NCBI GenBank assembly: GCA_002269645.1
Contig: NIVC01000771.1
Location: 7,159-71,158 of the forward strand
Length of the DNA stretch: 64,000 nucleotides
From: Macrostomum lignano
Lineage: Eukaryota
Reading direction: 5' to 3'
This document shows, piece after piece, positions 7,915 to 63,357 of this stretch (positions are counted from its first letter, which is position 1; every line of letters begins with the position of its first letter). Below the pieces are notes generated by a model, which searched no databases, was not told the DNA's origin, and was given only the letters and a program-made list of their open reading frames with translations. The position numbers and the translations under genes are program-made.

Positions 7915-8964
7915 ATGTTGTGTCAGCCCGCAAGAGTTTGCCGGTCATGCGCTCAGCCCTCCCACCGCCGCCTTTCTCCTTTTGCAGGTCGCCTCCCTGG
8001 GTTTCTCGACGACGCCGCCGCCAAGCTTCCCCGGCAGGCCTACGCCTCATCATCCAAGAAGTCGCTGTCGTCCGCCATACGCTCCTGGCAACGCTTCTGT
8101 CTCGAGCGGCGACTCGACCCGCTCTGCTGCCGGGCGGAGGACCTCGCGAATTACGTTGCCCGACTCTTGGATGGCCGGCTCAGCTCCTTCGGCAGCGTCC
8201 GCGTGCACATCAGCGCTCTCTCCGCCAACTTCCGGCTGGCAGGGGCGCCAGATCTGACCAAGCATCCGTTGCTGCACCTGGTGCTGCGGGGAGCCAAGCG
8301 CGAGCTCGGAGCCGGGCCGAGCCGCAAGCTGCCTGTGTCCCCCGAGATTTTAACACGGCTGCGTCGTCAAGTTGATTGCTCGAACCCATCCCAAGCTGCC
8401 TGCTGGGCTGCAGTCATGTGCGCCTGGTGGGGCATGTTTAGGAAGTCCAGCCTGTTGCCTGTTGGGCGCGCTGATCCGCCAGTGCTGCATCTCAGTTCTC
8501 TGTCGGAGTGCAAGGACGGTCTGCTTCTGCTGTCCAGCTATGGGAAAAGCAACCAGTTCGGCAGCAGCCACCGGGTTCTGCTGCCGCAACTGACGCCCGG
8601 TCACCCGCTCTGCTCCGTCGCGGCGCTGCGAGATCATCTTCGCTGCAATCGTTTGAGGCTACCGCAGCAGGGCCTGTTCACAATCTCTGGCGGTTCAGCC
8701 GGCAGCGTATCTCTGACATCCCGGATGTTGGACGTGCAGTTCAAGTGCTGGCTTAGCAAGGCGAGCATCAGCGCGGCAGGCTATTCCGTGCACAGCTTGC
8801 GAAGGGGTGCAGCCACCTGGGCGGCGCGTTTCGGTCTGTCAGTCAGGGAGATCCAGAGCGTGGGCGACTGGCGCAGCGACGCAGTGAACTGTTATTTGTC
8901 GTCTGGCGATGCAGCTTTCGGTGCTGCTCGGAAGCTGGCGGTTGCTTTGCTTTCTAGGTGCTGA
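7915..8964 (+). CDS. Tyrosine recombinase of the Ngaro element (open frame, 349 aa)
   Basis: Catalytic set present: MFRKSSL (R), GKSNQ (K), HSLRRGAATWA (HxxR), GDW (W), AVNCYL (Y). The N-terminal SAM-like binding domain is also present. Confidence 0.9.
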   Translation: MLCQPARVCRSCAQPSHRRLSPFAGRLPGFLDDAAAKLPRQAYASSSKKSLSSAIRSWQRFCLERRLDPLCCRAEDLANYVARLLDGRLSSFGSVRVHISALSANFRLAGAPDLTKHPLLHLVLRGAKRELGAGPSRKLPVSPEILTRLRRQVDCSNPSQAACWAAVMCAWWGMFRKSSLLPVGRADPPVLHLSSLSECKDGLLLLSSYGKSNQFGSSHRVLLPQLTPGHPLCSVAALRDHLRCNRLRLPQQGLFTISGGSAGSVSLTSRMLDVQFKCWLSKASISAAGYSVHSLRRGAATWAARFGLSVREIQSVGDWRSDAVNCYLSSGDAAFGAARKLAVALLSRC

Positions 8965-10053: not shown

Positions 10054-11330
10054 TTATCTTGATTTGCCCGGCACCTGAAACCTACTCTTAACGAATAATC
10101 TTATTTGGAGTGGGGTAGGATTGGGTTTCTTTTGAGGATTACAGCTGACAGACAGACACAGTCGAGACACGCGGTGGCTAAACAAAGACAGGCACACAAC
10201 AGGCACAGCAAACAACAGACACAAGGAGGACTCGTCAGCCCCACCTCCTTGTCCATCTGGGCCAAGAGGTCCGCCCTCAGCCTCCTCTTCATCAGCGTAA
10301 GTCACATCCAAAGCCTCGAGCTCATCGTCCTTATCGGCAATCTGTTCCCCATCTTGTCTTCTCCCAGTCCTGATGTCGCCGGGCCTCCCGGACGCCGCGG
10401 CTGGCGCAGACTTGGACGCCACTCCGTACCCAGGAGACGCGGCTGGCGCAGACTTGGACGCCTCTCCGCACCCAGGAGACGCGGTGGCAGCGGCAGCCAG
10501 CCGCAGGCGCTTGGGCGTTGGCTCGCTCACGATGACTCTGCGCGTCAAGCTGCTGAACTTCAGCGCGTTGAAGGTCTCGTCGAACAGCGCCGGGCACTGG
10601 GAGATGTTGACAATGATCGCCGCCTGCCCGCTGCCGCTGAAGTAGGGCTGCAGCAGGCGGGTGAGCTTCGAGTCCCGGAACGGCACCAGCATGGAGGCTC
10701 GGGGATTTCGCTGATTTCTCTGCAGAGTCTCAACGCAGCGGCGCAGGGTCAGCAGGCTGGAGTTGATGCTGCCGGCCTCTCGGGTGCGCTCGCCTGCCGT
10801 GCCGGCGTGGCGCTGCCGCTCCGAGCCGGCGAGGTCTCAGAAGGTCAGGCTGGACACCTGCGGGACGGCGGGGCACTGGAATCTGGGATGGGGGATGTGA
10901 GATGTAGGAGACTGGATTTTGGAAAAGGGATCTACGAGTAGGAGATAAGATTTGGGAGAAGGGATCCAGGAAATGGGATATGGAATTAGGGATCTGGGAT
11001 GCGGGAGCTGGGATGTGGGAGATGGAGATAGGAGATGGAAGATAGAAGCTGGGAGATACGTGGTGGCAGATGGCCGCAAAGTAAAATTATTATTCATATT
11101 TCACATTTTAATTGCGCCAATTTCGCAAGAAAATCAGCAGTCGCAGACGGACTGCTTTAAGTAGCCACGCATTAATATTGCTGCAGTTCTCCTGTTCCTT
11201 CTGAACCAATATGGGAGAGGCAGAAAGCTGGGCAGAGGCGGCCGCACAAGCCAGCAAATGCAGCCACAGTCTGAGCAGACGGGATGAGAAGAGCCTTGGG
11301 GTGTTCTCTGAGGCGTACTTATGAGCAAAT
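10054..11330 (-). pseudogene. Kinesin-6 (KIF20-like) 3' motor fragment, copy A
   Basis: Exon starting 10857: VSSLTF*DLAGSERQ...REAGSINSSLLTL...VPFRDSKLTRLLQPYFSGSGQAAIIVNISQCPALFDETFNALKFS. In-frame TGA at 10837-10839. A frameshifted switch-I remnant (RRNRRTAA...SS) lies near 11120-11200. No P-loop exon found. Confidence 0.88.
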
Positions 11331-11716
11331 CAGCTTTTGTACCCCTGGGGGGGCTGGTTTTGCGGCTTTGGTTAGCGTGGAGGGTGGAGGCTTGTACGTT
11401 GAGTCGTTTTCTACCCTCCCTGTGCAGCGGCCCGCTCCCAGGCCTGCTGAGGGTTTTGATGCCCGGATTATCGGCAGCTCCGTTCCCGTTCGTCTGTTTC
11501 CGTTCTCGCTAACCTTCATCAAATTTTGCGGCTGTTGCTTCGCCATTGTGTTCTCGAAAACCTGTGTTTCTTTGTGTGCTCCAGGTGTTCCTTCCGGGCG
11601 GGGTACTGAGAATCCGCTGCAGCTGCTCCAGGGCCAATAAAATCTGCTGCAGAGGCGGCCGCTGCCCTGCCGGACTCTCGAGCTGAGCTGAGACACCTGC
11701 GACTGAGCCTCCAGCC

Positions 11717-14700
11717 ATGGCAGAGGGAGGGCCACCGTCATTTGCTGATGAAAGAGTGAGTAAAGTAAAAGTGACAAATTGAGGCACATTGAATATTTGT
11801 TGGCTTGATTGCAGTTGCAGTACCTCACTTACATGTTTGAATGTGCAGCTTGGGTGCCTCAATTGCAGTTGCAGGAACTCACTCAGCCGGACCCCAGCAA
11901 CCGGACACGCGTCGGAGACTCACCAGCCGATCTCCAGACTCTCGCCCAGGACGTTATCCGAGGTGACTTCGGCCAGGTGCGGCGGCTGGCAACGCGCCAG
12001 CTGGTCACCAGCGCTGATGCAGCTCGTCGGACCGTCCTCATGCAGGTGGCCGACGCTCCTGAGACTCCCGTGCAGACTGAAAAGTGCATCTTGTACTTAT
12101 TTGAGCTGGGCGCGAACCCCAAGGCGGCTGACGCGAACGGCGACACGGCTGCGCACCTGGCAGCCCGGCGGGACCACCTGCGGCTGCTGACGCTGCTGTC
12201 GTTCGATGCGAAGTGGCTGCGGAACGACAACGGCGCCACTCCGCTGATGGAGGCGGCGCGGACTGGAAGCTGGAAATGCGCCAAGCACCTGCTGCACCTG
12301 CTCAGGCAGCCTAAGTTCAATGAGTGCAGACAGCACGGAAACTCAAAGAGGTCGCGACTGCTCGGACTGAAGGATCGCGAGGGTCGGACGGCGTCGGACC
12401 TGGCGAGGCTCAGCGGCCACTCAGAGCTGGCCAGCTACATCGAGCGGTGAGTGAGCAGTTCGCTGCTGTGTCCATCAAGTTTTGCAGCATTCGGTTGGGG
12501 TGGCCAGAGCTGCAGTCTCAGGCCAGCTAATCAGAGCCAGTCAGCTGAGCTTGTCTCTGACTGACTGCTTGATGGGGGAGAGCTGTGATTGGCTGGCTGC
12601 CTCCCAGCCAATGGGGTGCCGGTCGATCTCAGTCGAGAATGGAAGCTGTAGGGCCTCGGTGTGCAGTGAGAGTGTGTGGGTCGAGCTGCAGATGGAGAAC
12701 TGGGAGGCTGTGCGTGAGTGCTTTGTGAGACATTGTGAGGTGGAAGGAAACTCATGCTGCAAAAATGGAAAATGAGCTGCGTGTGAGAAGTCGGATGCGC
12801 TCTCGCCAATGCTGATTTTTGCAGAGCTGCTGCAGTCCTCTAGGAAAGTCCATCTGCGAGCAGCTCAGATAATTAAGAATTTCCACTTACTAAATCTATT
12901 ATGAAAATTCTATTGTAAAACTGAAATACTACGAAATTGGTTCTTGTTTTGCTGTTGCAGGGAGATGCGGCTGGTTGTGGATGCAGATGGCAAGATCTCC
13001 GGCCTGACAGACCAGGTGAGCGGCATCTGCGGTGCCGATGCGGCTGCAGCTGAGCAGCTGTGCTTAAATTTCCCGCTCGCCTTTGCAGGAGGAGGCGGAT
13101 CGACAGGAACTACGGCGGCTGGCCGAGGCGGGCGACTCGGCGGGGCTGCGGCGAGCGGCGACCCGCGGCAGCTGCGACCTGCCTGACGGATTTGGTCGCA
13201 CCGCGTTGATGCGGGCAGCTTACAACAGCTCGTGCGATGATGAGGCTCTGTGGGAGCAGCTGGTGCAGCTGGGTGACACCACCTGTGCGGATATATGGAC
13301 TGACAGTTGCCTGCACTATGCAGCCTTTGCTGGCAATTTTGCCGCAGCCTCCGCTCTGCTGGCTGCCGGAGCCTCCGCCAATGCCAGGGGTCGGTGGGAA
13401 TCCACGCCCCTCATGCGGGCAGCCTCTGCGTCCCCCACAACCGCCGCCGCAGTCGGTCGGGTTCTGCTGGACTCAGGGGCGGATTGGAGCCTGAAGGACA
13501 GAAGCGGCGACACTGCGCTGGATTTTGCCACACAGAAGAGAAACAGCAAACTGGCTGAGCTGCTGCGTGGGTGAGTTTCCATGGCGACTGAGAAAGTCTC
13601 TCTGACTTTGATTTATCATTGATAAACATTATGCTGTGATTTATGATTGAATATTGAGCAGCTGACTGCAGTTGCTCTGAGTGGGCATTTTTACATTTTT
13701 GTAGTTTAAATGGGCAGCAGACACTGACTGAGCTGCATTGAGGGAGTTTGCAGTGCAGTTTGGCTGCAGATTGCCAGTTGAATATTAATGTTCAGCTGCC
13801 TGCGAGCTGTGAGACACCAGCAAGAATTTTGATGTGGCTTCTGAGTTTTTAAATATACTAAAGAAAAAAAATTAATTTCTAAACAAAAACTTCATATATG
13901 TCTATACATATCTTATAGATTCATAGATTCTTATATCTTATGTATAACAGTCAGAATTTATTAAAAATAACGACTGCAGTTTTTATAGTAATTTTATGTT
14001 TATCAATACAATATTGATCAAAGAATGACAAAAAATTTAAAGAAAAATTACATGTGTTTCAGATTTGAAGGAGAAGTCTTCTTCGATGAGCGTCTGTGAG
14101 TTCGCTTCAGCACACAGCTACAGCACACAGCTACAGCAGACACAGCTACAGCACATAGTTACAGCACACACAGCTACAGCACACACAGCACACAGCTACA
14201 GCACACACAGCTACAGCACACACAGCTACAGCACACACAGCTACAGCACACACAGCTACAGCACACAGCTACAGCACACAGCTACAGCACACAGCTACAG
14301 CACACAGCTACAGCACACAGCTACAGCACACAGCTACAGCACACAGCTACAGCGCACACAGCTACAGCGCACACAGCTACAGCACACAGCTACAGCACAC
14401 AGCTACAGCACACAGCTACAGCACACAGCTACAGCACACAGCTACAGCACACAGCTACAGCACACACAGCACACAGCTACAGCACACACAGCTACAGCAC
14501 ACACAGCTACAGCACACACAGCGCACAGCTACAGCACACACAGCTACAGCACACACAGCGCACAGCTACAGCACACACAGCACACAGCTACAGCACACAC
14601 AGCTACAGCACACACAGCTACAGCACACAGCTACAGCACACAGCTACAGCACACACAGCACACAGCTACAGCACACACAGCTACAGCACACACAGCGCAC

Positions 14701-17700
14701 AGCTACAGCACACACAGCTACAGCACACACAGCGCACAGCTACAGCACACACAGCACACAGCTACAGCACACACAGCTACAGCACACACAGCTACAGCAC
14801 ACACAGCTACAGCAAATACAGCTACAGCACACACAGCTACAGCACACACAGCACACAGCTACAGCACACAGCTACTGCACACAGCTACAGTACATACAGC
14901 TACGGCCATATTCTAAACGTATTGGTCAGTTCCAGCTGTCATAATTAAGCCAAACACAAATTTTCTAGGAAAGCCAAGCGAGTGCCAACACAATTTCCTG
15001 ACGAAAAAGTAAGTAAAGTTAAAGGAGAGAAAACTGAGACATAGAATAATAATAGACTCAATAGAAGTTTCAGGAACTCTCTCAAATGTTTGAATGTGCA
15101 GCTTGGGTGCCTCAATTGCAGTTGCAGGAACTCACTCACATGTTTGAATGTGCAGCTTGGGTGCCTCAATTGCAGTTGCAGGAACTCACTCACATGTTTG
15201 AATGTGCAGCTTGGGTGCCTCAATTGCAGTTGCAGGAACTCACTCACATGTTTGAATGTGCAGCTTGGGTGCCTCAATTGCAGTTGCAGGAACTCACTCA
15301 CATGTTTGAATGTGCAGCTTGGGTGCCTCAATTGCAGTTGCAGGAACTCACTCACATGTTTGAATGTGCAGCTTGGGTGCCTCAATTGCAGTTGCAGGAA
15401 CTCACTCACATGTTTGAATGTGCAGCTTGGGTGCCTCAATTGCAGTTGCAGGAACTCACTCACATGTTTGAATGTGCAGCTTGGGTGCCTCAATTGCAGT
15501 TGCAGAAGCTCACTCAGCCGGACCCCAGCAACCGGACAAGCGTCGGAGACTCACCAGCCGATCTCCAGACTCTCGCCCACGACGTCATCCGAGGTGACTT
15601 CGGCCAGGTGCGGCGGCTGGCAACGCGCCAGCTGGTCACCAGCGCTGATGCAGCTCGTCGAACCATCCTAATGCTAGCGGCCGACGCTCCTGAGACTCCC
15701 GTGCAGACTGAAAAGTGCATCTTGTACTTATTTGAGCTGGGCGCGAACCCCAAGGCGGCTGACGCGAACGGCGACACGGCTGCGCACCTGGCAGCCCGGC
15801 GGGACCACCTGCGGCTGCTGACGCTGCTGTCGTTCGATGCGAAGTGGCTGCGGAACGACAACGGCGCCACTCCGCTGATGGAGGCGGCGCGGAATGGAAG
15901 CTGGAAATGCGCCAAGCACCTGCTGCACCTGCTCAGGCAGGAAAGGTGCAATGAGAGCAATGAGCTCGGAAACTCGAAGAAGTCGCGGCTGCTCGGACTG
16001 CAGGATCGCGATGGTCGGACGGCGTCGGACCTGGTGAGGCTCAGCGGCCACTCAGAGCTGGCCAGCTACATCGAGCGGTGAGTGAGCAGTTCGCTGCTGT
16101 GTCCATCAAGTTTTGCAGAATTCGGCTGGGGTGGCCAGAGCTGCAGTCTCAAGCCAGCCAATCAGAGCCAGTCAGCTGAGCTTGTCTCTGTCTGACTGCT
16201 TGATGGGCGAGAGCTGTGATTGGCTGGCTGCCTCCCAGCCAATGGGATGCCGGTTGATGTCAGTCGAGAATGGAAGCTGTAGGGCCTCGGTGTGCAGTGA
16301 GAGTGTGTGGGTTGAGCTGCAGATGGAGAACTGGGAGGCTGTGCGTGAGTGCTTTGTGAGACATTGTGAGGTGGAAGGAAACTCATGCTGCAGAAATGGA
16401 AAATGAGCTGCGTGTGAGAAGTCGGATGCGCTCTCGCCAATGCTGGTTGTTGCAGAGCTGCTGCAGTCCTCTTGGAAACTCCATCTGAAAGCAGCTCAGA
16501 TAATTAAGAATTTCCACTTACTAAATCTATTATGAAAATTCTATTGTAAAACTGAAATACTACGAAATTGGTTCTTGTTTTGCTGTTGCAGGGAGATGCG
16601 GCTGGTTGTGGGTGCAGATGGCTGGATCTCCGGCCTGACAGACCAGGTGAGCGGCATCTGCAGTGCCGATGCGGCTGCAGCTGAGCAGCTGTGCTCAAAT
16701 TTCCCGCTCGCCTTTGCAGGAGGAGGCGGATCGACAGGAACTGCGGCGGCTGGCCGAGGCGGGCGACTCGGCGGGGCTGCGGCAAGCGGCGACTCGCGGC
16801 AGCTGCGACCTGCCTGACGAATTTGGTCGCACCGCGTTGATGAAGGCAGCTCGGAACAGCTCGTACGATGATAAGGTTCTGTGGGAGCAGCTGGTGCAGC
16901 TGGGTGACCCCACCTGTGCGGATAGATGGGCTGAGAGTTGCCTGCACTGTGCAGTCAGGGCTGGCAATTCTGCCGCAGCCTCCGCTCTGCTGGCTGCCGG
17001 AGCCTCCGCCAATGCCAGGGGTCAGGGTGAACTCACGCCCCTCATGGATGCAGCCATTTGGGCGCCCCCCGCCACCGCCGCCGCAATCGGTCGAGTTCTG
17101 CTGGACTCAGGGGCGAATTGGAGCCTGAAGAACAGAGACGGCAGGACTGCGCTGGATTTGGCCACACAGGAGGGAAACAGCAAACTGGCTGAGCTGCTGC
17201 GTGGGTGAGTTTCCATGGCGACTGAGAAAGTCTCTCTGACTTTGATTTATCATTGATAAACATCATGCTGTGATTTATGATTGAATATTGAGCAGCTGAC
17301 TGCAGTTGCTCTGAGTGGGCATTTTTACATTTTTGTAGTTTAAATGGGCAGCAGACACTGACTGAGCTGCATTGAGGGAGTTTGCAGTGCAGTTTGACTG
17401 CAGATTGCCAGTTGAATATTAATGTTCAGCTGCCTGCGAGCTGTGAGACACCAGCAAGCATTTTGCTGTGACATTTGTGTTCGATTTTAACACAAAATGT
17501 TTTGGTGCCTAGTTTATTTAGGTTTAATTAAAGCAGAATGAAATAATAAAACACAGAGCATGGGCTCTCATCTGAGTTACTCTGACTTCAGACTCCGCAT
17601 TGCCTATTTAGGTACAACGGCAAGATTTACATCGACGAGCCTCTGGCACTGCCGTGAGTTCCTTCAGCACACAGCTACAGCACACAGCTACAGCACACAC

Positions 17701-19545
17701 AGGTACAGCACACACAGCTACAGCACACACAGCTACAGCACACAGCTACAGCACACAGCTACAGCTACAGCACACAGCTACAGCACACACAGCTACAGCA
17801 CACACAGCTACAGCACACACAGCTACAGCACACAGCTACAGCACACAACTACAGCACACAGCTACAGCTACAGCACACAGCTACAGCAAACACAGCTACA
17901 ACACACAGCTACAGCACACAACTACAGCACACAGCTACAGCACACAGCTACAGCACACAGCTACAGCACACAGCTACAGCACACAGCTACAGCACACACA
18001 GCTACAGCACACAGCTACAGCACACACAGCTACAGCACAAAGCTACAGCACACAGCTACAGCACACAGCTACAGCTACAGCACACAGCTACAGCAAACAC
18101 AGCTACAACACACAGCTACAGCACACAGCTACAGCACACAGCTACAGCACACAGCTACAGCACACACAGCTACAGCACACACAGCTACAGCACACACAGC
18201 TACAGCACACACAGCTACAGCACACACAGCTACAGCACACAGCTACAGCACACAGCTACAGCACACAGCTACAGCACACAGCTACAGCTACAGCACACAG
18301 CTACAGCAAACACAGCTACAACACACAGCTACAGCACACAGCTACAGCACACAGCTACAGCACACAGCTACAGCACACACAGCTACAGCACACACAGCTA
18401 CAGCACACAGCTACAGCACACACAGCTACAGCACACAGCTACAGCACACAGCTACAGCACACAGCTACAGCACACAGCTACAGCACACACATCTACAGCA
18501 CACAGCTACAGCACACAGCTACAGCACACAGCCACAGCATGAAAATTATTCTTCATTGCCTTAATCTGCCTCCTCTCAGCCCCCTTTTCTTGGAGCGCTG
18601 GGACAAAGTTCGCCTCATCGGCCGCGGAGGCTTCGGCGATGTCCACGAAGTTCGAACTGACACGGGCGTCACGTGCGCTGCCAAGACTCTCAGACTGCCT
18701 GTGCAGCTCGGTGATGAGCTGCCCTCTGTGAGCACAGAGATCCACAGAGCTTTCGAGAGCGAGAGAAACCTGTGCCGACTGCGGCATCCCAACATCGTCA
18801 AGTTCTTGCACATCGCTCAGCCGGAGCCTGCCACAGTCGTTGTGTTCATGGAGCTGCTGGACGGCCGAAGCTTGGAGAGGTTTATCGACAACAAGCCGCT
18901 GGACGAGCCAAAGATTCGAGACTTCAGCGAGCAGGTGAGCATTGTGCATCCTTGATGCTCCTGTTCCATGTTCCCATGAATGATGACTGCTCACTGACCG
19001 ACCGCTCGCAGATCTGCCGCGCGCTGCTCTACCTGCACAGCGAGCAGCCGCCCGTGATCCACAGAGACATCAAGTGCGCGAACATAATTGTTTGTGCTGG
19101 CAACACGCGAATCAAGCTGATCGACTTCGGCCTGTCAATCAAGCTGGAGCAGTCAGTCACCCACGTCTCAGGCTCCAAAGCCATCCCCAAAGGCACTCTG
19201 AACTTCATGGCGCCAGAGCTGTTCGGAGCGGGAGAGTCGGACAGCGTGCAGTACAGCAGAGAGTCGGACATCTGGGCGTTCGGCTGCTCGGTCTTCCAGA
19301 TGGCGTCCGGCGCGAGGCCGTTCAAAGGCTATGAAGGATTTTATCCAGTCGCTTTTAAAATCACAAACAGCGGCGCCCCCGCCCTGCCGGACGGCCGGTC
19401 GGCAGAGCTGAGGGATTTCTACAGCCGCTGCACCGCCAAGGAGCGCAGGAGGAGAAGATCCGCACAGGAGCTGCTGGAGCACGAGTTCCTGACGGGCGGG
19501 AAGCTGAAGGCGGGATTTTTCAGATTTTTCGACGCATGGAAATGA
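11717..19545 (+). CDS. Ankyrin-repeat Ser/Thr (MAP3K/STE-like) kinase gene 1, doubled ankyrin block, ~1087 aa
   Basis: Exons 11717-11755, 11875-12446, 12961-13015, 13089-13570, 14063-14095, 14969-15008, 15506-16077, 16592-16646, 16720-17204, 17612-17653, 18580-18934, 19012-19545. All introns are GT-AG and phases are compatible (3264 nt). Exon 2/7 acceptors may lie 12 nt downstream. Kinase motifs: GRGGFG, AAKT, HRDIKCAN, DFG, GTLNFMAPE, DIWAFGC. Confidence 0.8.
14108..14900. repeat. (CAGCACACAGCTA)-type intronic microsatellite
   Basis: Low-complexity ACAGC array after the micro-exon. ORF 14065..14916 is an artefact. Confidence 0.95.
15086..15517 (+). repeat. 54-bp tandem repeat x8 duplicating the splice-acceptor region of the second ANK-A exon
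   Basis: Unit catgtttgaatgtgcagcttgggtgcctcaattgcagttgcaggaactcactca, reading MFECAAWVPQLQLQELTH in frame. It is single-copy at the paralogous sites ~11832 and ~39170. Confidence 0.95.
17665..18539. repeat. (CAGCACACAGCTA)-type intronic microsatellite
   Basis: Same repeat and same intron position as 14108-14900. Confidence 0.95.
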
Positions 19546-26530: not shown

Positions 26531-28110
26531 CAAGCGGAGCGCAGAGAAACTCGAAATGAGGGCCCAGCAACTGAGCTGAGTGAGAAATTCTCAGAGACTT
26601 GCGGTTGCCAGCCTGCTGCAGGGGAAGGAGATGGGTGAGAGGGAGATGGGTGAGAGGGGGTGGGTGAGAGGGAGATGGGTGAGAGGGGGATGAGTGAGAG
26701 GGGGATGGGTGAAAGGGGGATGGGTGAGAGGGAGATGGGTGAGAGGGGGATGGGTGAGAGGGGGATGGGTGAGAGGGGGATTGGTGAGAGGGAGATGGGT
26801 GAGAGGGGGATGGGTAGAGGGGGATGGATGAGAGGGAGATGGTGAGAGGGGATGGGTGAGAGGGGGATGGGTGAGAGGGGGATGAGAGGGGGAGGGTGAG
26901 AGGGAGATGGTGAGAGGGGGATAGGTGAGAGGGGGATGGGTGAGAGGGGGATGGGTGAGAGGGAGATGGGTGAGAGGGTGTGTGTCAAAGGAGATGGTGA
27001 GAGAAACACAATACGAGCTTAGAGACAGTAAGATGGTTATGGCACATGAGTACAAATCTGAGATTCCAAACCCACGCACAAAATGACAAAGACAAACACA
27101 GGCTGTAAACTTTAAGCAGTAATATCAGTTGAGCTATTTCAGGTCTTAACATGTAGATTAGCGAACAAAAATGTGTCCCAATTAATCAACAGTAAACTGC
27201 ACATACTTTACATACCATCCAATGTTGATCTGACAGAAAAAATGAAACAGCAATACGTAAATTTGAGCAATGCAGTTGAAAAATCGATATATCTATGCAG
27301 AACTTCCGAGTCAGTCAGTTGCACTGGATAAATAATGTAATAATGTTATTACTCTGGCTGTGTGAGCAGTCAGCTATCTGAAGGATGGCTGTGTGAGCAG
27401 TCGAAGAGCTGCCTGAAGGATGGCTACAAGCAGTCAGTCAGCTGTCTGAATGATGGATATAGATACACATGTACAGAATACAGAGAGATGAGAGCTACTT
27501 GTTAATCGGCTCCGATGTCTTCTCAAGTTGGTCTGCTTAACCTTAGCTACTCAATTGCCGTTAACTGTAGTTCTGTAACTTTACTGTTTCTGTAATGAAA
27601 ATCTGGTAATCTAATTATGAGCTAAGGTATTTGAGCTTGCATGCATAAGCTATGAGCCATAGGAAAATGCTCATAGGATTTGAAATGGGATTTTGGCAAG
27701 GTCACCTGGCCGTGTCAACCTGGCCGGGTCACTTGGCCGAGGCTGGACGGCAACGAGAGGACTCAATGTGAGCCTGGAGCGAGGGGACCAAAGTTATGAA
27801 GTAGGCTCCAACGTTGCTGTCGCCAGCCTCTGTCTAAGGCAGATCAGCAGATCAGACCAGGACAACACGACCAGTTCAGCAGGAGAACGGAAGTTCATTG
27901 TGCTGCCCCGCCTAATGGTATGCAAAAGTGAGATTAGGAAAAGTCCAGCCTGCTGAAGTTGGCTTGCACTAAGAGCGTCAGGCTCCAACGAAAACTGCTG
28001 ACATCAGCGCCCAAGATCTGCGACAGCGGTACTGCTGCGACACTGGTGGAGCTGCCGAATGCCGCACGACGGCCGGGTCTGATCTAGCCGTGTTCACATG
28101 GAACTGGCAT

Positions 28111-28476
28111 TTTTTATTAGAGGCAGAGGGGGGGGGGTTGTGTGCACCCTGGCGCACTTTAAGCGACATAGGCACACAACCGGCGAGAGGCATTACTGCC
28201 CATTCCGCCGACTCCCCTGAGGAGGCATACAAGCGCGCGGATACGTTACGCAGGCACACACTCACACAGGAGTGTACAGCGGCCCTAACTTTATATTATC
28301 GTTAGGCATGTACACTTCACTGCGCCTTGGGGGGTTGGCTCTCAGGGCCGTTAATTGCACGAGCAAAGCCAAGCCGAGATTCCAATTCAGCCCCAAATTA
28401 ATGTGACTGCACTTGGAATCGAGCCTGGGTCGCTGGCAAACCAGAGCAGCTGCGCTACCGCTGAGCTACGGCCCCC
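28111..28476 (-). mobile_element. tRNA-derived SINE (~365 bp) with target-site duplication
   Basis: Minus 5' end GGGGGCCGTAGCTCAGCGGTAGCGCAG (A box) followed by GGCTCGATTCC (B box). Short A tail at the other end. TSD (c)atggaactggcat at 28097-28110 and 28476-28489. Confidence 0.88.
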
Positions 28477-31209
28477 ATGGAACTGGCATACAGGCGTTCA
28501 ATGTTTTTCACTCAAGTAGTGGCTATTGCGTAGTTCTCTAACCCTCTTGCTATTGTGCAGTTTCGAATAATGCGACTGAGCACAAATATGAGCGCGGAAA
28601 AGAAGAGAAACTTCAAGTTGCGCCAGAACAATGGAGCCATTGCAGTTATAAGACTTGGTCTGCACATACTGAAAGTAAAAAGAGGTGCGACGATCACCGC
28701 CCATTCCGACCCACGAAAAACCGCCTATACATGCTGGTTCCCTGACTTTCCGGAGTCTGGACAAGCATTTCTTAGAAAACACCAGTTCTTCCAACCAAGA
28801 GGACATGAGCGGCTAAAGACCAGAAGCTGGAGGTCGACATGCGGCAGAGGCTGAGTTGCAGTGAAATGTATCGATTACTGTATTCATTAGTTTAAATAAA
28901 AATTGTAAAATATTGAACTATGTAGACAGATCGGTGCACATGCAGGCGATGTCAATTTCAACCACTGTCTGGTTGCCTCGTCAGACGGAGTCCACGATGA
29001 AAACTCTGGACTGCGATGTCTGTGAGGCAGTCATACAGTGTGACAGAGCGGACTAGACAGCATCACGCAGGGCTAGTAGGGTGCTGGCGTCAACAGAACC
29101 AGATGTTTGAGACGTTGTGGCTCGGCTATAGGAGTCAGCCTTGTCATGTGGCACAGCAAACGACCTGTTGACTTCATCCCAGGTGCTGTCCGCTAAAATG
29201 AAGGCAAAAAGGCCTACCAAATCCAGCCATGTGTGCCGACTGATAGCATTTAAATTTCTCTAGCCAGAAAAATCAGAAAATGAACAAAAATGAGTAAAAT
29301 TGAAAATTGTTTGCTTGCTTGTAGTTGCTTGCCGCATTAATTCAGCGCTAGTGCTCGATAGTCACCCCAGAAGGCGTAGCATGCCAGCTCTTAGGGGAGT
29401 CAAGTATGCTGGGTCAAGCGTAAGACCATCGTTACCCCTTTGAGAGTCCCCCAGCAGGTGCCAGTAGCCCGACACCACGGCTCTGGGGGGCGGAATCCGT
29501 TCGCCCTTGGGAAAAGCCACCTCGAGGTAAGGAGGAGGCAGACAGACGGAACAAGCAGCAGATTTTAAAATGTTTTCTACTGTACCATTGCTCATCTCTG
29601 CAACCAGCCGGAACCGCATGACATACCTCTAGCCATTGCTCAGCCTACTTGATACCTGCTGAATAGGCTTATCTGTTTGCCTCCTCTGAAGAGAGAGTTC
29701 GAGAAATGAAATATGGCTTGAAAACTACAGATTTACCATGACTCTTTGACCCAGCAGAAGTCCAAAAAAGCCATCTTTGAAATCCTATCGCATTGTCTGC
29801 ACAGTGCACAGGTATGCTGATTAGTACAGTGATTTTAGTTGATATCTGTACAGCTCCGTTTAAAACTGACCCATTCTGCCAGAGAGCCTCAGAAGTTGGC
29901 CTTCATGGCTGAGAATCGCCTCAGGCCAATCGCACAGAATTGAACCAACAGCACATGTATAAATGTTTCAGGAGGCAGCTGCTCCGCCCCTCAATTGCAG
30001 TCTTGGGCTTCATCAGTTGTTTATCATTAAAGTACAGCCGAGCTCTGGCACCCCATCTCAATTCTGTCCAGCTCTCGGCCGCAGCAACTCACTGCATTTT
30101 GCATTCCTGCCACCTGCAGCCAGCAGCAACAGACAGGCTTTGAGCCGCACTGAATGGCCTGAGAGCCATCAAATTCTGGGATGCGAGCATGGCAACAAAT
30201 GCCTTATTTATGACAAAACGCAGTCTTGAGCCGTAGGGAGCGGGTGGTTAGAGAGGCCAGCTCAACCTCAAGCAGTAGTTATCTCTGCTCGCTCGATATT
30301 CTCAGGCCAGCTCAACCTCAAGCAGTAACAGTGCTCGGTGTGTGTTGAGCAGTGAGCTGGGTGGAGCTGCATTGTAGCTAGACTTGTTTGTCTCAGGGGT
30401 TGCGGGGGTTGGGTGGTTCGAGAGGCCAGTATGGGGTGATTGCGAACTCGAGCAGTTTTCTCTTTGCCGGCTGTTTATCACACCAGACTGTCGCACTGCG
30501 AGTGCTGAGCTGGGTGGGGCCGTTCCAGATGAAGGTTAGAGATTTAATTAGCGATGAATCTGCAGAGATGAGCAGCGCAAACCTGAGCTGTCTGAGGCTG
30601 CAGTGGCGGCTGCTCCCGAATGAGTTGCAGCCCCAGCCTTGCACAATGGAGACTCTGCATTGTGCTTGAGCACCCTGCCTGCCCCCTCACTTCACCTTCG
30701 CTTCTGTGCTCAGAGATGACGGGCGGAGGCTGGGGCTGGCGGTCAGCTGCACTTTTTTGATAGAAAACAAGCCTTTTATTTGGGGTCTGAGCTGGGATCT
30801 GATGGAGAATAGAGAAGCTGAGCTGGGATCTGATGGAGAATAGAGAAGCTGAGCTGGAATCTGATGGAGAATAGAGAAGCTGAGCTGGGATCTAATGCAG
30901 AGTAGAGAAGCTGAGCTGGGATCTGATGCAGAATAGAGAAGCTGAGCGGGGATCTGATGGAGAGAGAAGCTGAGCTGGGATCTGATGGAGAAGAGAAGCT
31001 GAGCTGTGGAGTTGACAATCTCAGCAGTGAAATTCGGAAGTGCCGGTCACCGAGTGCAAAATGCATTAAAAAAGGCAGGCAGCCGCAGTGCACAGATAAA
31101 CTGTGTAGAATCCAAAATCAGCCTGTATGTGAGTCCCGCACTGTCCTGGTCAGGCACCGAGCTGATGGCGAATGAAGTCTGAGCTAGAAAATGTTCTAAA
31201 ATAGAGATG

Positions 31210-35790: not shown

Positions 35791-36268
35791 CAAGCGTATC
35801 CCTCATATTTTCCCTGAGAATTTTTCTGTACTTTTTCATAGTTTTTTGTGCAAGCTACTGTATTCCAGAAGCCTAGGACTAGGAGCAAAGGTAAGACTGT
35901 TTATCAGCAACAAACTGTAAAAACCCGCAGATTTTAAAGCCCGCTGATTTCTAATTCCCGAAACTATTTGTAAGCATACATTCTTAAATCTGAAGTGACA
36001 CTCACAAAAACTTGTTAATAGCAGGGGTAGAATTAAACGAAAATTAGAGTACCGATTACAACGAAGGTAGGGTTTTATGATGATTCCCGCAACATAGAAA
36101 TTCTTGTATTAAGAAAATTTTATACTACAGTTGTTAGTGGTTTCCAGAATAAAACGCTTGAAAAACCCTGTGATTCCTTTTTGCATCACGTGAAAGTTTT
36201 TATTTAAAGTACTAGCAAGCAAAAAAATGCCTTGTTGGTTAGCAATCATTTTTACAACTATGTTTCAG

Positions 36269-37684
36269 CTGCGTGTCTATCCGTCTAAGTGGCTACCCGA
36301 CCTAATTACTAACCGAAGAGGCCAGCTTCAATGGCCAGCATCTCCCAAAATCGAGTCTCCAAGCTCCAAAGCAACTCAAACAACAAAAGCGCTGCAGTCA
36401 ACAGCTAATTTGATTCGTCTGGATCCAGCAGTTTGCAATGGAGCCAGCCATTGCGAGTTTTTACTTCACCGAGGCTCCCCGCTCTCCTTGTCCAGACAGC
36501 TGGCATTCCGAATCGCCTCTAAAGTTAAGGAGGCTTTCGTTGCCAGCACAGCCACTGTTTACGGACAGAAAAATCAGTTCCATCTCGCTCTGCCTGGTGG
36601 CCAGTCGGCCCAAATGCTGATGCAGTTTCTGGCAGCATTGTCAAGGGATGACGACACTTTAGCCAACGCTTTTGCTACCACTTTGCATATTTGGGTTACA
36701 GATGAGCGATGTGTTCATGATGGTGAGTGAATCCATTGTTTTGCATCACCTAATATTCTGATAGAGAAAGCTTTACTTAAACATTATGCATTCATTACTG
36801 AAACCAAACTCGGGTATGACTAAAAATAGCTAGTTTTCTTCTAGTTCATAGTCGCGCACTTTTAGTACTGTCCATGCATGTGTGGTAGCTCGTAATAAGC
36901 TTTTTCTTCTTTAATGGTTAACTTTTTTAAGTCTTAAGTCTAAGTGAAAGTTCTTGGTAAAAAAACTAGAAGTATGCAGCGTTCAAGTGCGTTACTTACT
37001 TGCGTATTTCAATGTATTGCGCTATTGATTATAAAAACAGTTTTTGATTTTGCATTGTCAGATCCCGGATCCGTCGCTCAAAACGAATCGCAACTCAACT
37101 CAGCCGTGATTGATCGAAACTTTCTGCAACAACTTCCTTCAGCTGCCCGATTGCCACTCAATCATCTTCACTTTCCACGGCTGCTCACTGCGGATGTCGC
37201 TGGCTGCAAAGCTGCTGCAGATGCTTATGCAAGTGAAGTGGATCACTGGCTCAACTTCAGGAGTAATATTAGCGCCCTGCCACCTAGCTTTGACTTCGTT
37301 GTCCTTGGAGTTGGAACTGATGGGCATGCAGCATCGCTATTCTCACCGCATGATTTGGATAAATGGAACCACAGCATGCCCATCAGCTCTGCTAAAGACC
37401 AGCTATCGCAAGGATGTGAGCAATCAGCTCGCGTCACAAATTCACCGAAGGCGCCTTTCTTACGCATCAGTCTTTCCTCCTGTAGACTTGCGAGTTCTAG
37501 CGAAGTTGCTTTTATTTTAGTCAGCAAAGCTAAACAAGCTGCTATCGACCTGATTGCAAAGCCCAGAGAAACTGAATTGAAAACTCCAATTTACTTTCAC
37601 CTGTTGCGTCTTGTTGGAAAGAAACGTGGCAGATTATGGGTTGACCATTCTTTGGATCTTAACAATATTGTTTTAGAAATATAG
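36269..37684 (+). CDS. H6PD: H6PD 3' exons (linker plus 6-phosphogluconolactonase domain)
   Basis: Exon 36269-36722 (LRVYP...NQFHLALPGG...IWVTDERCVHD) splices in phase 1 to exon 37062-37684 (FDFVVLGVGTDGHAASLFS...RISLS...stop). The linker upstream of FHLALxGG matches the bifunctional H6PD layout. Upstream exons were not found nearby. Confidence 0.85.
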
Positions 37685-42000: not shown

Positions 42001-42972
42001 CCCCCCGTTCCGGGAGCGCTGGGACGCCGTTCGCTTAATCGGCCGCGGAGGCTTCGGCGAAGTCCACGAAGTTCTCACCGACATGGGCGTCACGTGCGCT
42101 GCAAAGACCCTCAGACTGCCTATGCAGCTCGGTGATGAGCTGACCTCTGTGAGCTCAGAGATCCACAGAGCTGTCGAGAGCGAGAGAAACCTGTGCCGAC
42201 TGCGGCATCCCAACATCGTCAGGTTCTTGCACATCGCTCAGCCGGAGCCCGCCACAGTCGTTGTGTTCATGGAGCTGCTGGACGGCCGAAGCTTGGAGAG
42301 GTTTATCGACAACAGGCCGCGGGACGAGCCAAAGATTCGAGACTTCAGCGAGCAGGTGAGCATTGTGCATCCTTGATGCTCCTGTTCCATGTTCCCATGA
42401 ATGATGACTGCTCACTGACCGACCGCTCGCAGATCTGCCGCGCACTGCTCTACCTGCACAGCCGGCAGCCGCCCGTGATCCACAGAGACATCAACTGCTC
42501 GAACATAATTGTTCGTGCTGACAACACGCGAATCAAGCTGATCGACTTCGGCCTGTCAATCAAGCTGGAGCAGTCAGTCAGCCACATGTCAGCCTCTTCT
42601 CAGTCCTTGCCCAAAGGCACTCTGAACTTCATGGCGCCTGAGCTGCTCGGAGCGGGAGAGTCGGACAGCGTGCAGTACAGCAGAGAGTCGGACATCTGGG
42701 CGTTCGGCTGCTCGGTCTTCCAGATGGCGTCCGGCGCGAGGCCGTTCGCGAACGCCAAAAGCCTGTTAGAAATGGCCCAGCTGATCGACAGGAAGGGCGC
42801 CCACGCCCTGCCAGACGGCCGGTCCGCAGAGCTGAGGGATTTCTACAGCCGCTGCACCGCCAAGGACCGCAGGAGGAGAAAATCCGCACAGGAGCTGCTG
42901 GAGCACGAGTTCCTGACGGGTGGGAAGCTGAAACCGCGATTCCTGAGGTCGCTTTTCGGTGCAGGGCAATGA
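39047..42972 (+). CDS. Ankyrin-repeat Ser/Thr kinase gene 2, single ankyrin block, ~692 aa
   Basis: Exons 39047-39085, 39215-39777, 40337-40391, 40465-40949, 41328-41360, 41992-42355, 42433-42972. All GT-AG and phase-compatible (2079 nt). Catalytic loop HRDINCSN. Confidence 0.82.
41368..41950. repeat. (CAGCACACAGCTA)-type intronic microsatellite
   Basis: Same intron position as in gene 1. Confidence 0.95.
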
Positions 42973-63335: not shown

Positions 63336-63357
63336 TTTTTTATTGAAAAAAAATTAT

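What the first reader, a model, noticed from the sequence alone, without database searches (positions are those of the whole stretch)
11717..19545. Tandem duplication fused in frame: the former start exon became an internal exon, giving one kinase with two ankyrin sensor blocks
Seen: the first ANK-A/ANK-B block has no kinase after its micro-exon (14063-14095, phase-2 donor). Exon 14969-15008 (ttttctag|G AAA GCC AAG CGA GTG CCA ACA CAA TTT CCT GAC GAA AAA|gtaagt) is homologous to the gene 2 start exon (ATG GCA GAG CGA GGG CCA ATA CCA ATT CCT TAC GAT AAA|gtaagt). It has no ATG and has a phase-2 acceptor instead. All 12 exons join without a frameshift (3264 nt). Inference: two differently specified ANK-B modules feed one kinase, so module number is a second axis of variation.
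Basis: partly seen in the sequence, partly recalled or inferred. Interest (0 to 1): 0.8.

Follow-up and report, generated by a model that had tools for sequence, protein, structure and literature searches.

The report
Two-sensor ankyrin-kinase gene in a flatworm
In the flatworm Macrostomum lignano, one gene carries two copies of a fast-evolving ankyrin "sensor" block in front of a single kinase, joined in frame through a former start exon, but nobody has yet shown that the full two-block messenger RNA is made.

Summary
The 12 exons at 11717-19545 all have GT-AG borders and join into one open frame of 3264 nt (3276 nt with the acceptors that RNA-based models of paralogues use). The product is ANK-A/ANK-B, ANK-A/ANK-B, then an intact STE/MAP3K-like kinase.

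The window is the last 64 kb of M. lignano contig NIVC01000771.1 (Mlig_3_7).

For one gene:
- Exon 6 derives from a start exon and keeps about 9 nt of old 5'UTR. The family's 5'-flank motif is absent upstream of it.
- An RNA-seq-derived model at a paralogous locus (PAA77278.1) splices the homologue of exon 6 internally, at the same acceptor and phase.
- A second two-block locus (PAA83579.1 region) is also open end to end, through a different junction.
- Between the blocks, introns are 96.7% identical and the ANK-B exon 90.2% (dN/dS 2.5). The changes sit on the ankyrin binding groove and are split evenly between the copies.

Against:
- No database protein has the two-block architecture.
- The RNA-based model at the other two-block locus skips the inner modules.
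- ANK-only products are common.
- A spliced leader ending in AUG would start block 2 in frame.

The duplication is old and was later partly homogenised. Interpretation partly supported; RNA evidence is missing.

The parts
11652..11678 (+). Conserved family 5'-flank motif (promoter or 5'UTR) upstream of the ATG of gene 1
   Evidence: The motif GAGGCGGCCGCTGCCCTGCCGGACTCT occurs only at 11652 and 38974 in the window, with 0 matches expected by chance. It is conserved upstream of the start exons of L001-L004.
11717..11755 (+). Exon 1, start exon (MAEGGPPSFADER), phase-0 donor gtgagt
11869..12446 (+). Exon 2, ANK-A of block 1.
   Evidence: The upstream AG is favoured by the RNA-based models of paralogues.
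12961..13015 (+). Exon 3, 55-nt linker exon of block 1
13089..13570 (+). Exon 4, ANK-B of block 1 (four ankyrin repeats with hypervariable groove positions)
   Evidence: It has no private change at columns that are invariant in the nine other family copies.
14063..14095 (+). Exon 5, 33-nt micro-exon (FEGEVFFDERL) with a phase-2 donor CT|GTGAGT. If the intron is retained, the reading is CTG TGA, an immediate stop.
14104..14903 (+). (ACACAGCTACAGC)n minisatellite that fills intron 5
   Evidence: The same minisatellite follows every micro-exon of the family.
14904..14968 (+). Unique junction sequence (attctaaacgtattggtcag...ataattaagccaaacacaaattttctag) that ends in the acceptor of exon 6
   Evidence: It is shared with L006 11571-11635 and, up to ggttag, with L001 14023-14041.
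14969..15008 (+). Exon 6, adaptor exon derived from a start exon ((L)KAKRVPTQFPDEK). It has no ATG, a phase-2 acceptor and a phase-0 donor gtaagt.
   Evidence: It matches 38 of 40 nt (my count) of L006 11636-11675, which is an internal exon in the annotated mRNA for PAA77278.1.
15057..15516 (+). 54-bp tandem array in intron 6, 8.5 copies of the acceptor plus the first bases of exon 7. It is open in the frame of exon 7 from 15065, with 8 ATGs and 19 in-frame AG acceptors.
15500..16077 (+). Exon 7, ANK-A of block 2, with tandem acceptors at 15500 and 15506
16592..16646 (+). Exon 8, linker exon of block 2
16720..17204 (+). Exon 9, ANK-B of block 2
17612..17653 (+). Exon 10, 42-nt micro-exon (YNGKIYIDEPLALP) with a phase-2 donor
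17665..18539 (+). Second copy of the minisatellite, in intron 10
18580..18934 (+). Exon 11, N-lobe of the kinase (GRGGFG, CAAK)
19012..19545 (+). Exon 12, C-lobe of the kinase (HRDIK, DFG, APE) and the stop codon
11808..13847 (+). Tract homogenised with 15439-17481. Introns are 96.4-97.3% identical, and similarity ends abruptly on both sides.

Best explanation
Gene 1 (window 11717-19545, which is NIVC01000771.1:18875-26703 in M. lignano) is one transcription unit. It has one family-type 5' flank, two ANK-A/ANK-B sensor blocks and one intact STE/MAP3K-like kinase.

The blocks are joined by an adaptor exon (exon 6). This exon descends from a start exon that lost its promoter and nearly all of its 5'UTR, changed ATG to AAA, and turned the last bases of the old 5'UTR into a phase-2 acceptor. 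Default exon-by-exon splicing gives a protein of 1091 aa (or 1087 aa) with the layout ANK-A1, ANK-B1, linker of roughly 50 aa, ANK-A2, ANK-B2, kinase.

The junction is old. It is shared with at least two other loci, and the two blocks carry different micro-exon types. About 2 kb of the two blocks was later homogenised, most likely by gene conversion. Selection has since driven, or has kept, differences on the ankyrin binding groove of both ANK-B copies.

Shown: the anatomy, the frame, the origin of exon 6, the use of that acceptor in a paralogue's RNA-based model, and the selection signature on both blocks. Inferred: that the full-length two-block mRNA is a real and substantial product, and that ligand binding by either ANK-B surface controls the kinase.
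For: - The frame and splice sites are intact across 12 exons.
- The kinase motifs are intact (my reading of the translation). Pfam Pkinase scores E = 4.9e-47. The closest solved structures are MAP3K2, MAP3K5 and STK24.
- The family 5'-flank motif occurs only upstream of exon 1 and of gene 2, not upstream of exon 6. Homology of exon 6 to start exons begins about 9 nt before the old ATG.
- The homologue of exon 6 in L006 (38 of 40 nt identical, same upstream junction) is an internal exon. It is entered in phase 2 from the donor ATGCAGTCTCG|gt in the RNA-seq-derived model PAA77278.1. The Mlig_3_7 annotation was built from StringTie/TACO assemblies (PMC5730564).
- A second two-block locus, L001, has an 11-exon, 3177-nt ORF that is fully open through a different junction. 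Its annotated transcript runs from the exon 1 upstream of block 1 to the kinase downstream of block 2.
- Between the two blocks the introns show 29 mismatches in 867 nt, and the ANK-B exon 47 in 482 (p = 3e-6). For ANK-B, dN is 0.126, dS 0.050 and dN/dS 2.5.
- 20 of the 31 amino-acid differences fall in family-hypervariable columns (p = 2e-7). B1 has 0 and B2 has 2 private changes at family-invariant columns.
- The changes are split 15 on B1 and 12 on B2.
- 14 of 23 DARPin-randomised groove positions differ, against 16 of 100 other positions (p = 3e-5).
Against: - No A-B-A-B-kinase protein appears among the M. lignano hits or among 1.84 billion representatives.
- The only database protein from gene 1 is a partial of block 1 alone, A0A1I8I8W9. 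This absence is weak evidence, because the annotation there is sparse: a 6-phosphogluconolactonase-like gene at 36227-37684 is also not called.
- The RNA-based model at the L001 two-block locus (PAA83579.1) joins A1 to B2 and skips B1, the micro-exon and A2.
- ANK-only products of about 400 aa are common, and one ends exactly at the stop built into the micro-exon donor.
- dS among all ANK-A paralogues is only 0.02-0.16, which means concerted evolution. Intact ORFs could therefore be maintained by conversion rather than by selection on this particular copy.
Confidence: 0.5

Rival explanations
1. The locus is one transcription unit but mainly makes single-block proteins, with the blocks used as alternative cassettes. 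Exon 1->exon 7 gives block 2 plus kinase. Exon 5->exon 11 gives block 1 plus kinase. Mixed paths such as A1-link-B2 are also possible. All of these are in frame because the modules are phase-symmetric.
For: The isoforms that skip a block, and the A1-B2 chimera, all translate without internal stops at 691-695 aa. The RNA-based model at the L001 two-block locus is exactly such a path, A1 + link + B2 + micro-exon + kinase, 699 aa. The RNA-based model PAA77278.1 likewise jumps between modules of neighbouring paralogues. Every annotated ANK-kinase protein that I retrieved and mapped has a single A-B block.
Against: Short-read assemblers handle blocks that are 95% identical poorly, so the chimeric models may be artefacts. 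Exon 6 would be unnecessary for pure cassette use, yet it keeps its acceptor, its donor and an open frame in two loci. Pairing of neighbouring splice sites favours inclusion of all exons; this last point is an inference.
Confidence: 0.2
2. The locus makes two separate products. The first is an ANK-only protein from block 1, which ends at the stop built into the micro-exon donor or at a 3' end inside intron 5. The second is block 2 plus kinase. That second product would start either from a spliced leader trans-spliced onto the exon 7 acceptor, with the leader's 3' AUG opening the frame, or from an ATG in the 54-bp array or the internal Met (..ILMLAADAPE..).
For: The M. lignano spliced leader ends in ATG, and trans-acceptors look like [T/C]TNCAG (PMC8629364). 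SL-ATG joined to exon 7 reads M(LQ)KLTQPDP.. in frame. Retention of intron 5 gives ..FFDERL* at once. Annotated ANK-only proteins exist, and PAA77278.1 ends at the micro-exon. The 54-bp array is open in frame and contains 8 ATGs. One annotated paralogue product begins MLAADAPE (P0127). About 30% of M. lignano genes are trans-spliced, and repeat-rich spacers are typical of its operons.
Against: Exon 6 supplies an intact cis donor (gtaagt) just upstream of exon 7, which should outcompete trans-splicing. SL-ATG joined to exon 6 is out of frame and stops after 11 codons. Intron 5 contains no AATAAA or ATTAAA, although none lies in the 1 kb after the real stop codon either, so this is weak. Under this model exon 6 is a dead relic, yet its homologue is spliced as a coding exon in L006.
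Confidence: 0.17
3. The two-block arrangement has no function. It is a decaying or silent paralogue kept looking intact by gene conversion, or an assembly artefact that placed two haplotypes or paralogues in tandem.
For: I found no gene model for gene 1 in the NCBI Mlig_3_7 set. The family shows pervasive concerted evolution. The genome is a repeat-rich hidden polyploid with 180 Mb of near-identical duplicated blocks (PMC5730564). The neighbouring gene 2 does show decay.
Against: The blocks differ by 3.3% in introns and 10% in ANK-B, and their flanks are unrelated. The junction is a specific structure that recurs in L001 and L006. The sequence of block 1 is reproduced in a separately deposited UniProt entry, A0A1I8I8W9. 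Neither ANK-B copy carries excess framework damage, unlike gene 2, which has 8 such changes. The excess of non-synonymous changes at groove positions in both copies is not what neutral decay produces.
Confidence: 0.08

Closest known systems
Chimeric or fused genes made by tandem duplication or read-through, in which the downstream start exon becomes internal (general class; from my own knowledge)
   Same: A downstream 5' exon loses its ATG and its promoter and gains an acceptor in the right phase. One promoter then drives a longer ORF built from phase-compatible modules.
   Different: Here both partners are paralogous copies of the same sensor block, so the result is a change in module number rather than a new domain combination. 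The junction has itself been copied to other loci. RNA proof is lacking.
The M. lignano ANK-A/ANK-B family with one block: BOX15_Mlig015152g1 (PAA83579.1), BOX15_Mlig013011g1, BOX15_Mlig017273g1 and gene 2 of this window (BOX15_Mlig027240g1, PAA77016.1)
   Same: The exon plan is the same: start exon, ANK-A, 55-nt linker, ANK-B, micro-exon, minisatellite intron, two kinase exons. Protein identity is 78-82% over the best BLAST alignment, and module identities reach 93%. The 5'-flank motif is the same.
   Different: Those annotated products carry one ANK-A/ANK-B block. Gene 1 encodes two blocks plus the adaptor exon.
Platyhelminth ANK-caspases and the M. lignano caspase with a kinase-like pro-domain (PMC11463336)
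   Same: M. lignano paralogues carry the same N-terminal ANK-A/ANK-B module in front of a caspase (P0013, ANK-A 88% identical) or in front of a kinase plus a caspase (P0180). The logic is the same: an ankyrin pro-domain with a C-terminal effector.
   Different: Gene 1 has no caspase domain. That paper did not describe the hypervariable ANK-B surface or the variation in module number.
Repeat-based recognition proteins with hypervariable binding positions, such as fungal STAND/NLR-like proteins with ANK, TPR or WD repeats, and designed DARPins (from my own knowledge)
   Same: The framework residues are invariant. Variation is concentrated at ankyrin positions 2, 3, 5, 10, 13 and 14. dN/dS exceeds 1, and the paralogues show concerted evolution.
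   Different: There is no NACHT or NB-ARC domain. The effector is an STE-like kinase. A role in immunity or non-self recognition is conjecture.
Animal ankyrin-repeat kinases (ILK, TNNI3K, RIPK4/ANKK1, DAPK1; from my own knowledge)
   Same: Ankyrin repeats and a protein kinase domain lie in one polypeptide.
   Different: The kinase here is closest to MAP3K2, MAP3K5 and MST3 in the STE group, not to the TKL or CAMK groups. No close relative turned up outside Macrostomum. The next hits are below about 35% identity.

Membership tests
Eukaryotic protein kinase superfamily, STE/MAP3K-like, catalytically competent | Full kinase domain with the Gly-rich loop, the VAIK lysine, HRD, DFG and APE | tested here: met
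   Pfam PF00069 scores E = 4.9e-47 over residues 800-1070. GRGGFG, CAAK, HRDIK, DFG and APE are all present (my reading of the translation). The best solved relatives are MAP3K2 (8.6e-30), MAP3K5 and STK24.
Ankyrin-repeat proteins | Tandem 33-residue ANK repeats recognised by the family profiles | tested here: met
   Ank_2 scores E = 1.2e-48 over 7 stretches, with Ank_4, Ank and Ank_5 hits in both blocks. Four repeats in ANK-B align to the TPLH register.
M. lignano ANK-A/ANK-B-kinase gene family | Shared exon plan, phases and 5'-flank motif, and high identity to the annotated members | tested here: met
In-frame fusion gene (two modules expressed as one protein) | Continuous ORF across the junction with canonical splice sites | tested here: met
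In-frame fusion gene (two modules expressed as one protein) | The downstream module has no promoter or start codon of its own | tested here: inconclusive
   The family 5'-flank motif is absent and ATG has become AAA. However, in-frame ATGs in the 54-bp array and a spliced-leader AUG at exon 7 remain possible.
In-frame fusion gene (two modules expressed as one protein) | A transcript that joins the two modules (junction 14095->14969) | not testable with these tools
   No RNA reads were available. The only indirect support is the paralogous exon in L006, which is spliced at the same acceptor in an RNA-based model.
SL trans-spliced operon (two genes, one primary transcript) | 3'-end formation of the upstream gene and a trans-splice acceptor that yields a usable ORF for the downstream gene | tested here: inconclusive
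   Intron 5 has no AATAAA or ATTAAA. The spliced leader joined to exon 6 is out of frame, and joined to exon 7 it is in frame. A cis donor lies upstream of exon 7.
Platyhelminth ANK-caspases | C-terminal caspase (peptidase C14) domain | tested here: not met
   The gene 1 product has no PF00656 hit. Paralogues do have it.

The most novel reading that the evidence does not exclude
The family may be a built-in diversity system. Its parts are phase-symmetric sensor blocks, an adaptor exon, minisatellite introns that act as recombination or splice-choice sites, arrays of duplicated acceptors, and donors with a built-in stop. Together these would let one locus, and the family as a whole, produce many combinations by alternative splicing and frequent unequal exchange: one or two differently specified ANK-B surfaces joined to a kinase, a caspase or no effector. 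That would be a flatworm counterpart of repeat-based non-self or immune receptor repertoires.
Probability: 0.12. Interest if true: 0.85.

Novelty: new variant of a known kind. Interest (0 to 1): 0.5.

Why it matters
If the two-block protein is made, it shows at single-nucleotide resolution how a start exon is converted into an internal adaptor exon, and how the number of recognition modules on one signalling enzyme can change.

The gene also belongs to a Macrostomum-specific family that I could not find described in the papers I searched. In this family the same ankyrin module is coupled to a kinase, to a caspase, to both, or to no effector, and its binding groove evolves faster than the neighbouring introns. 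That is the signature of an arms-race or recognition system, in a laboratory model flatworm where transgenesis is available and the function could be tested.

The analysis also shows that current M. lignano gene models in this family are unreliable. Several are chimeric, some are truncated, and this gene has no model at all.

Tried and rejected
- **Search for a two-block protein.** I looked for any annotated A-B-A-B-kinase protein with the fused product as query, against the 5.8-billion-sequence clustered set and against 1.84 billion representatives. None was found. The longer hits turned out to be one ANK block with two or three kinase domains (P0001, P0170), a different ankyrin array plus kinase (P0175), or ANK-kinase-caspase (P0180).
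- **P0146.** This A-B-A-B ANK-only entry is a frameshift-ridden gene prediction that appears to derive from the L001-type locus. I did not count it as evidence.
- **Reaching the annotation over gene 1.** I tried to get there through the neighbouring kinesin exon. No M. lignano protein was found.
- **The 754-aa ANK-only gene upstream in L001.** I tried to recover its product. It was not returned.
- **ORF intactness as proof of selection.** I downgraded this argument after finding that dS among ANK-A paralogues is only 0.02-0.16, which indicates concerted evolution.
- **Absence of a poly(A) signal in intron 5.** This is uninformative, because none lies within 1 kb after the true stop codon either.
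- **Spliced leader onto exon 6.** Rejected as a start for block 2, because it is out of frame.
- **Structure prediction.** Not run. The tool returns no coordinates, so the hypervariable positions could not be mapped in 3D.

Full report
**1. Source**

The window is eukaryotic, with GT-AG introns and many minisatellites. Its proteins match only Macrostomum lignano closely. Locus L005, fetched through protein PAA77016.1 (BOX15_Mlig027240g1), is identical to window 29047-52135. The contig is 71,158 nt long, so the window is its last 64,000 nt and contig coordinate = window coordinate + 7158. The contig is NIVC01000771.1 of assembly Mlig_3_7. That assembly's annotation is a genome-guided RNA-seq assembly built with StringTie, TACO and TBONE (PMC5730564).

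**2.

They join into 3264 nt with one terminal stop and encode 1087 aa.
- The domain order is ANK, ANK, then Pkinase at residues 800-1070.
- Exon 5 is 33 nt and has a phase-2 donor. Exon 6 is 40 nt, accepts in phase 2 and donates in phase 0.
- Within the window, tblastn finds ANK-A and ANK-B at three places (blocks 1 and 2 and gene 2) but kinase exons at only two, 18580-19545 and 42002-42972. Block 1 therefore has no kinase of its own.
- Both ANK-A exons have tandem acceptors (ttgcag|ttgcag|). RNA-based models of paralogues read ..DERLQELTQ.., which means they use the upstream AG. The likelier CDS is therefore 3276 nt and 1091 aa, using 11869 and 15500. It is also in frame.

**3. History of the duplication**

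- Self-comparison shows high similarity only between 11808-13847 and 15439-17481, at 94.6%.
- Inside that tract the introns are 96.4-97.3% identical. Outside it the copies are old. Exon 1 versus exon 6 is 67%, the following intron 60%, the 3' parts of introns 4 and 9 are unalignable, and the two micro-exons differ in length (33 versus 42 nt) and are 58% identical.
- The micro-exon of block 1 is of the same 33-nt type as that of gene 2. The micro-exon of block 2 is of the 42-nt type seen in PAA83579.1.
- My reading is an old two-block structure that was later homogenised over about 2 kb, most likely by gene conversion. It is not one recent tandem duplication.

**4. Origin of exon 6**

- Normal start exons of the family are preceded by a conserved flank..gaggcggccgctgccctgccggactct..gagacacctgcgactgagc...
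- That motif occurs in the window only at 11652 and 38974.
- Homology of exon 6 to start exons begins about 9 nt before the old ATG. L004 reads ctttctgccATGGCAGAGCAAGTGCC and the window reads ttttctagGAAAGCCAAGCGAGTGCC. The pyrimidine run was therefore already there, gc became ag, and ATG became AAA.
- Block 2 thus lacks the family promoter and start codon.

**5. The same junction occurs elsewhere, and its acceptor is used**

*L006.* In locus L006 (NIVC01000754.1) the same minisatellite is followed by attctaaacgcatcggttag..ataattaagccaaacataaattttatag|GAAAGCCAAGCGAGGGCCAACACAATTTACTGACGAAAAA|gtaagt.

- The RNA-derived model PAA77278.1 (MQSRKAKRGPTQFTDEKLQELTQ..) starts in an exon ATGCAGTCTCG|gtaagt, which has a phase-2 donor. 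It then splices into this exon at exactly the homologous acceptor.
- This is the best available evidence that the predicted acceptor of exon 6 works, and works in the predicted phase.

*L001.* In locus L001 (NIVC01000414.1, gene BOX15_Mlig015152g1) the order is again A-B, 33-nt micro-exon, minisatellite, ttctaaacgaatcggttag, A-B, 42-nt micro-exon, minisatellite, kinase.

- After ggttag the sequence runs straight into the interior of the ANK-A exon (TCTCCAGACTCTCG..). This looks like a deletion of roughly 0.6 kb between short similar sequences.
- The new junction is again in phase, and the 11-exon ORF of 3177 nt is fully open.
- The two-block design therefore predates the split of these loci and is open in both.

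**6. Selection on the blocks**

- Between the two blocks the ANK-B exon has diverged three times faster than the flanking introns: 47 mismatches in 482 nt against 29 in 867, p = 3e-6.
- For ANK-B, dN is 0.126, dS is 0.050 and dN/dS is 2.5. For ANK-A, dN/dS is about 1.
- In an alignment of ten ANK-B exons from six loci, all of them intact, 20 of the 31 differences between B1 and B2 lie in hypervariable columns (p = 2e-7).
- B1 has no private change at family-invariant columns and B2 has two. Gene 2 has eight.
- Polarised by outgroups, the changes split 15 on B1 and 12 on B2.
- Mapped on the ankyrin register, 14 of 23 positions equivalent to the randomised DARPin positions (2, 3, 5, 13, 14, 33) differ, against 16 of 100 others (p = 3e-5). 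Position 10 is also hypervariable.
- Both ANK-B copies therefore behave as translated recognition surfaces under diversifying selection.
- Caveat: dS among all ANK-A paralogues is only 0.02-0.16, which means concerted evolution. Patchy conversion could therefore contribute, and ORF intactness alone proves little.

**7. What argues against a two-block protein**

- No retrieved protein has A-B-A-B-kinase.
- The only database protein from gene 1 is A0A1I8I8W9, a partial without a Met that covers exons 2-4 of block 1, with 370 aligned residues at 99.7% identity.
- I found no NCBI model for gene 1. The annotation there is sparse, though: a 6-phosphogluconolactonase-like gene at 36227-37684 is also uncalled.
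- The RNA-based model at L001 joins exon 1, A1, the linker, B2, the 42-nt micro-exon and the kinase, and skips B1, the 33-nt micro-exon and A2. PAA77278.1 also hops between modules of neighbouring paralogues. These paths may be real alternative splicing, or artefacts of assembling short reads over near-identical blocks.
- ANK-only products of about 400 aa are common.
- Every micro-exon donor is NN|GTGAGT in phase 2, so a retained intron stops translation at once. PAA77278.1 ends at that point.
- The M. lignano spliced leader ends in ATG (PMC8629364). Joined to exon 7 it would read M(LQ)KLTQPDP.. in frame, whereas joined to exon 6 it stops after 11 codons.
- The 54-bp array in intron 6 is open in frame and contains 8 ATGs.

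**8. Most likely mechanism**

The locus has one promoter, and neighbouring splice sites are the expected partners. Exon 6 has an acceptor that a paralogue's RNA-based model uses, and both blocks are under protein-level selection. On that basis I favour a single mRNA that encodes two differently specified ANK sensor blocks ahead of one STE/MAP3K-like kinase. I put this at about 0.5.

How the blocks control the kinase is inferred, not shown. Ligand binding to the hypervariable groove might release or assemble the kinase.

In other family members the same N-terminal module is coupled to other effectors:
- a caspase (P0013);
- a kinase plus a caspase (P0180);
- three kinase domains in tandem (L002, P0170);
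- a different C-terminal region of about 570 aa (P0018);
- no effector at all.

Variation in module number and module type is thus a general trait of the family.

**9. Comparison with what is known, and novelty**

- Fusion by internalising a start exon is a known kind of event (from my own knowledge).
- ANK-caspases of flatworms, and an M. lignano caspase with a kinase-like pro-domain, have been reported (PMC11463336).
- I found no description of this ANK-A/ANK-B family, of its hypervariable groove, or of its two-block members.
- I file the finding as a new variant of a known kind, of moderate interest. One junction-read count would decide it.

Noticed in passing
window 39047-42972 (gene 2, BOX15_Mlig027240g1, PAA77016.1): Gene 2 looks degenerate. 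The canonical exon 2 acceptor has mutated (ttgcagttgcag became ttgcatttgcat). The annotated mRNA instead uses an AG 12 nt inside the exon. It then enters the kinase exon at an AG 8 nt downstream (ACCCGCAG|G), which shifts the frame and yields a 436-aa ANK-only ORF. The ANK-B of gene 2 has 8 private changes at family-invariant columns, against 0-3 in the two-block genes (the other single-block copies have 0-7).
   Followed up: partly
window 15057-15516; also L001 10089-10475: A 54-bp tandem array (8.5 copies) duplicates the ttgcagttgcag acceptor and the first bases of the ANK-A exon. It is open in the exon's frame (ELTHMFECAAWVPQLQLQ repeated), with 8 ATGs and 19 in-frame AG acceptors. Several UniProt partial proteins start inside this translation (WVPQLQLQELTQ..).
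   Followed up: partly
window 14104-14903, 17665-18539, 41369-41950; L001 12725-14018; L006 10705-11600: The same (ACACAGCTACAGC)n minisatellite fills the intron after every micro-exon of the family. The block-to-block junction lies at its 3' end. It might be a recombination hotspot or a splicing element.
   Followed up: no
window 14094-14101 and 17652-17659 (micro-exon donors): Every micro-exon donor is NN|GTGAGT in phase 2, so retaining the intron creates an immediate TGA. The RNA-based protein PAA77278.1 ends exactly there. This could be a built-in switch between the kinase-bearing form and an ANK-only form.
   Followed up: partly
L002 20125-23647 (NIVC01000875.1, BOX15_Mlig034440g1): One ANK-A/ANK-B block is followed by three tandem copies of the kinase exon pair. 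Predicted proteins carry two (P0001) or three (P0170) kinase domains.
   Followed up: partly
L001 1-2934: Upstream of the L001 two-block gene lies an ANK-only gene with an annotated product of 754 aa. Most of its kinase has been deleted, leaving only the last 40-odd bases of the kinase exon and the family 3' region. I could not retrieve its full product, which may itself have two blocks.
   Followed up: partly
proteins P0018/P0019, P0180, P0176: The ANK-A/ANK-B module also occurs in front of a different, unidentified C-terminal region of about 570 aa, and in an ANK-kinase-caspase protein. A further protein, P0176, has kinase, kinase, caspase and then ankyrin repeats at its C-terminus. Domain shuffling is rampant in this family.
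   Followed up: no
window 7915-8964 (+), 10054-10692 (-), 36227-37684 (+): Three other coding features lie in the window: a tyrosine-recombinase-like ORF (weak PF00589 hit, probably from a mobile element), the C-terminal exon of a kinesin motor domain on the minus strand just upstream of gene 1, and a 6-phosphogluconolactonase/glucosamine-6-phosphate-isomerase-like gene. I found no called gene or database protein for any of them.
   Followed up: partly
window 62478-63981 (-): Two adjacent long ORFs (285 and 207 aa) in AT-rich DNA have no Pfam match. Their origin is unknown; a mobile element is possible.
   Followed up: partly
window 27538-28560 and L001 17549-18191: A segment 95-97% identical lies directly after the kinase stop codon in L001, but about 8 kb downstream of the gene 1 stop in the window. 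The intervening 8 kb is mostly tandem repeats, which suggests a repeat expansion or an insertion in the 3' flank of gene 1.
   Followed up: no
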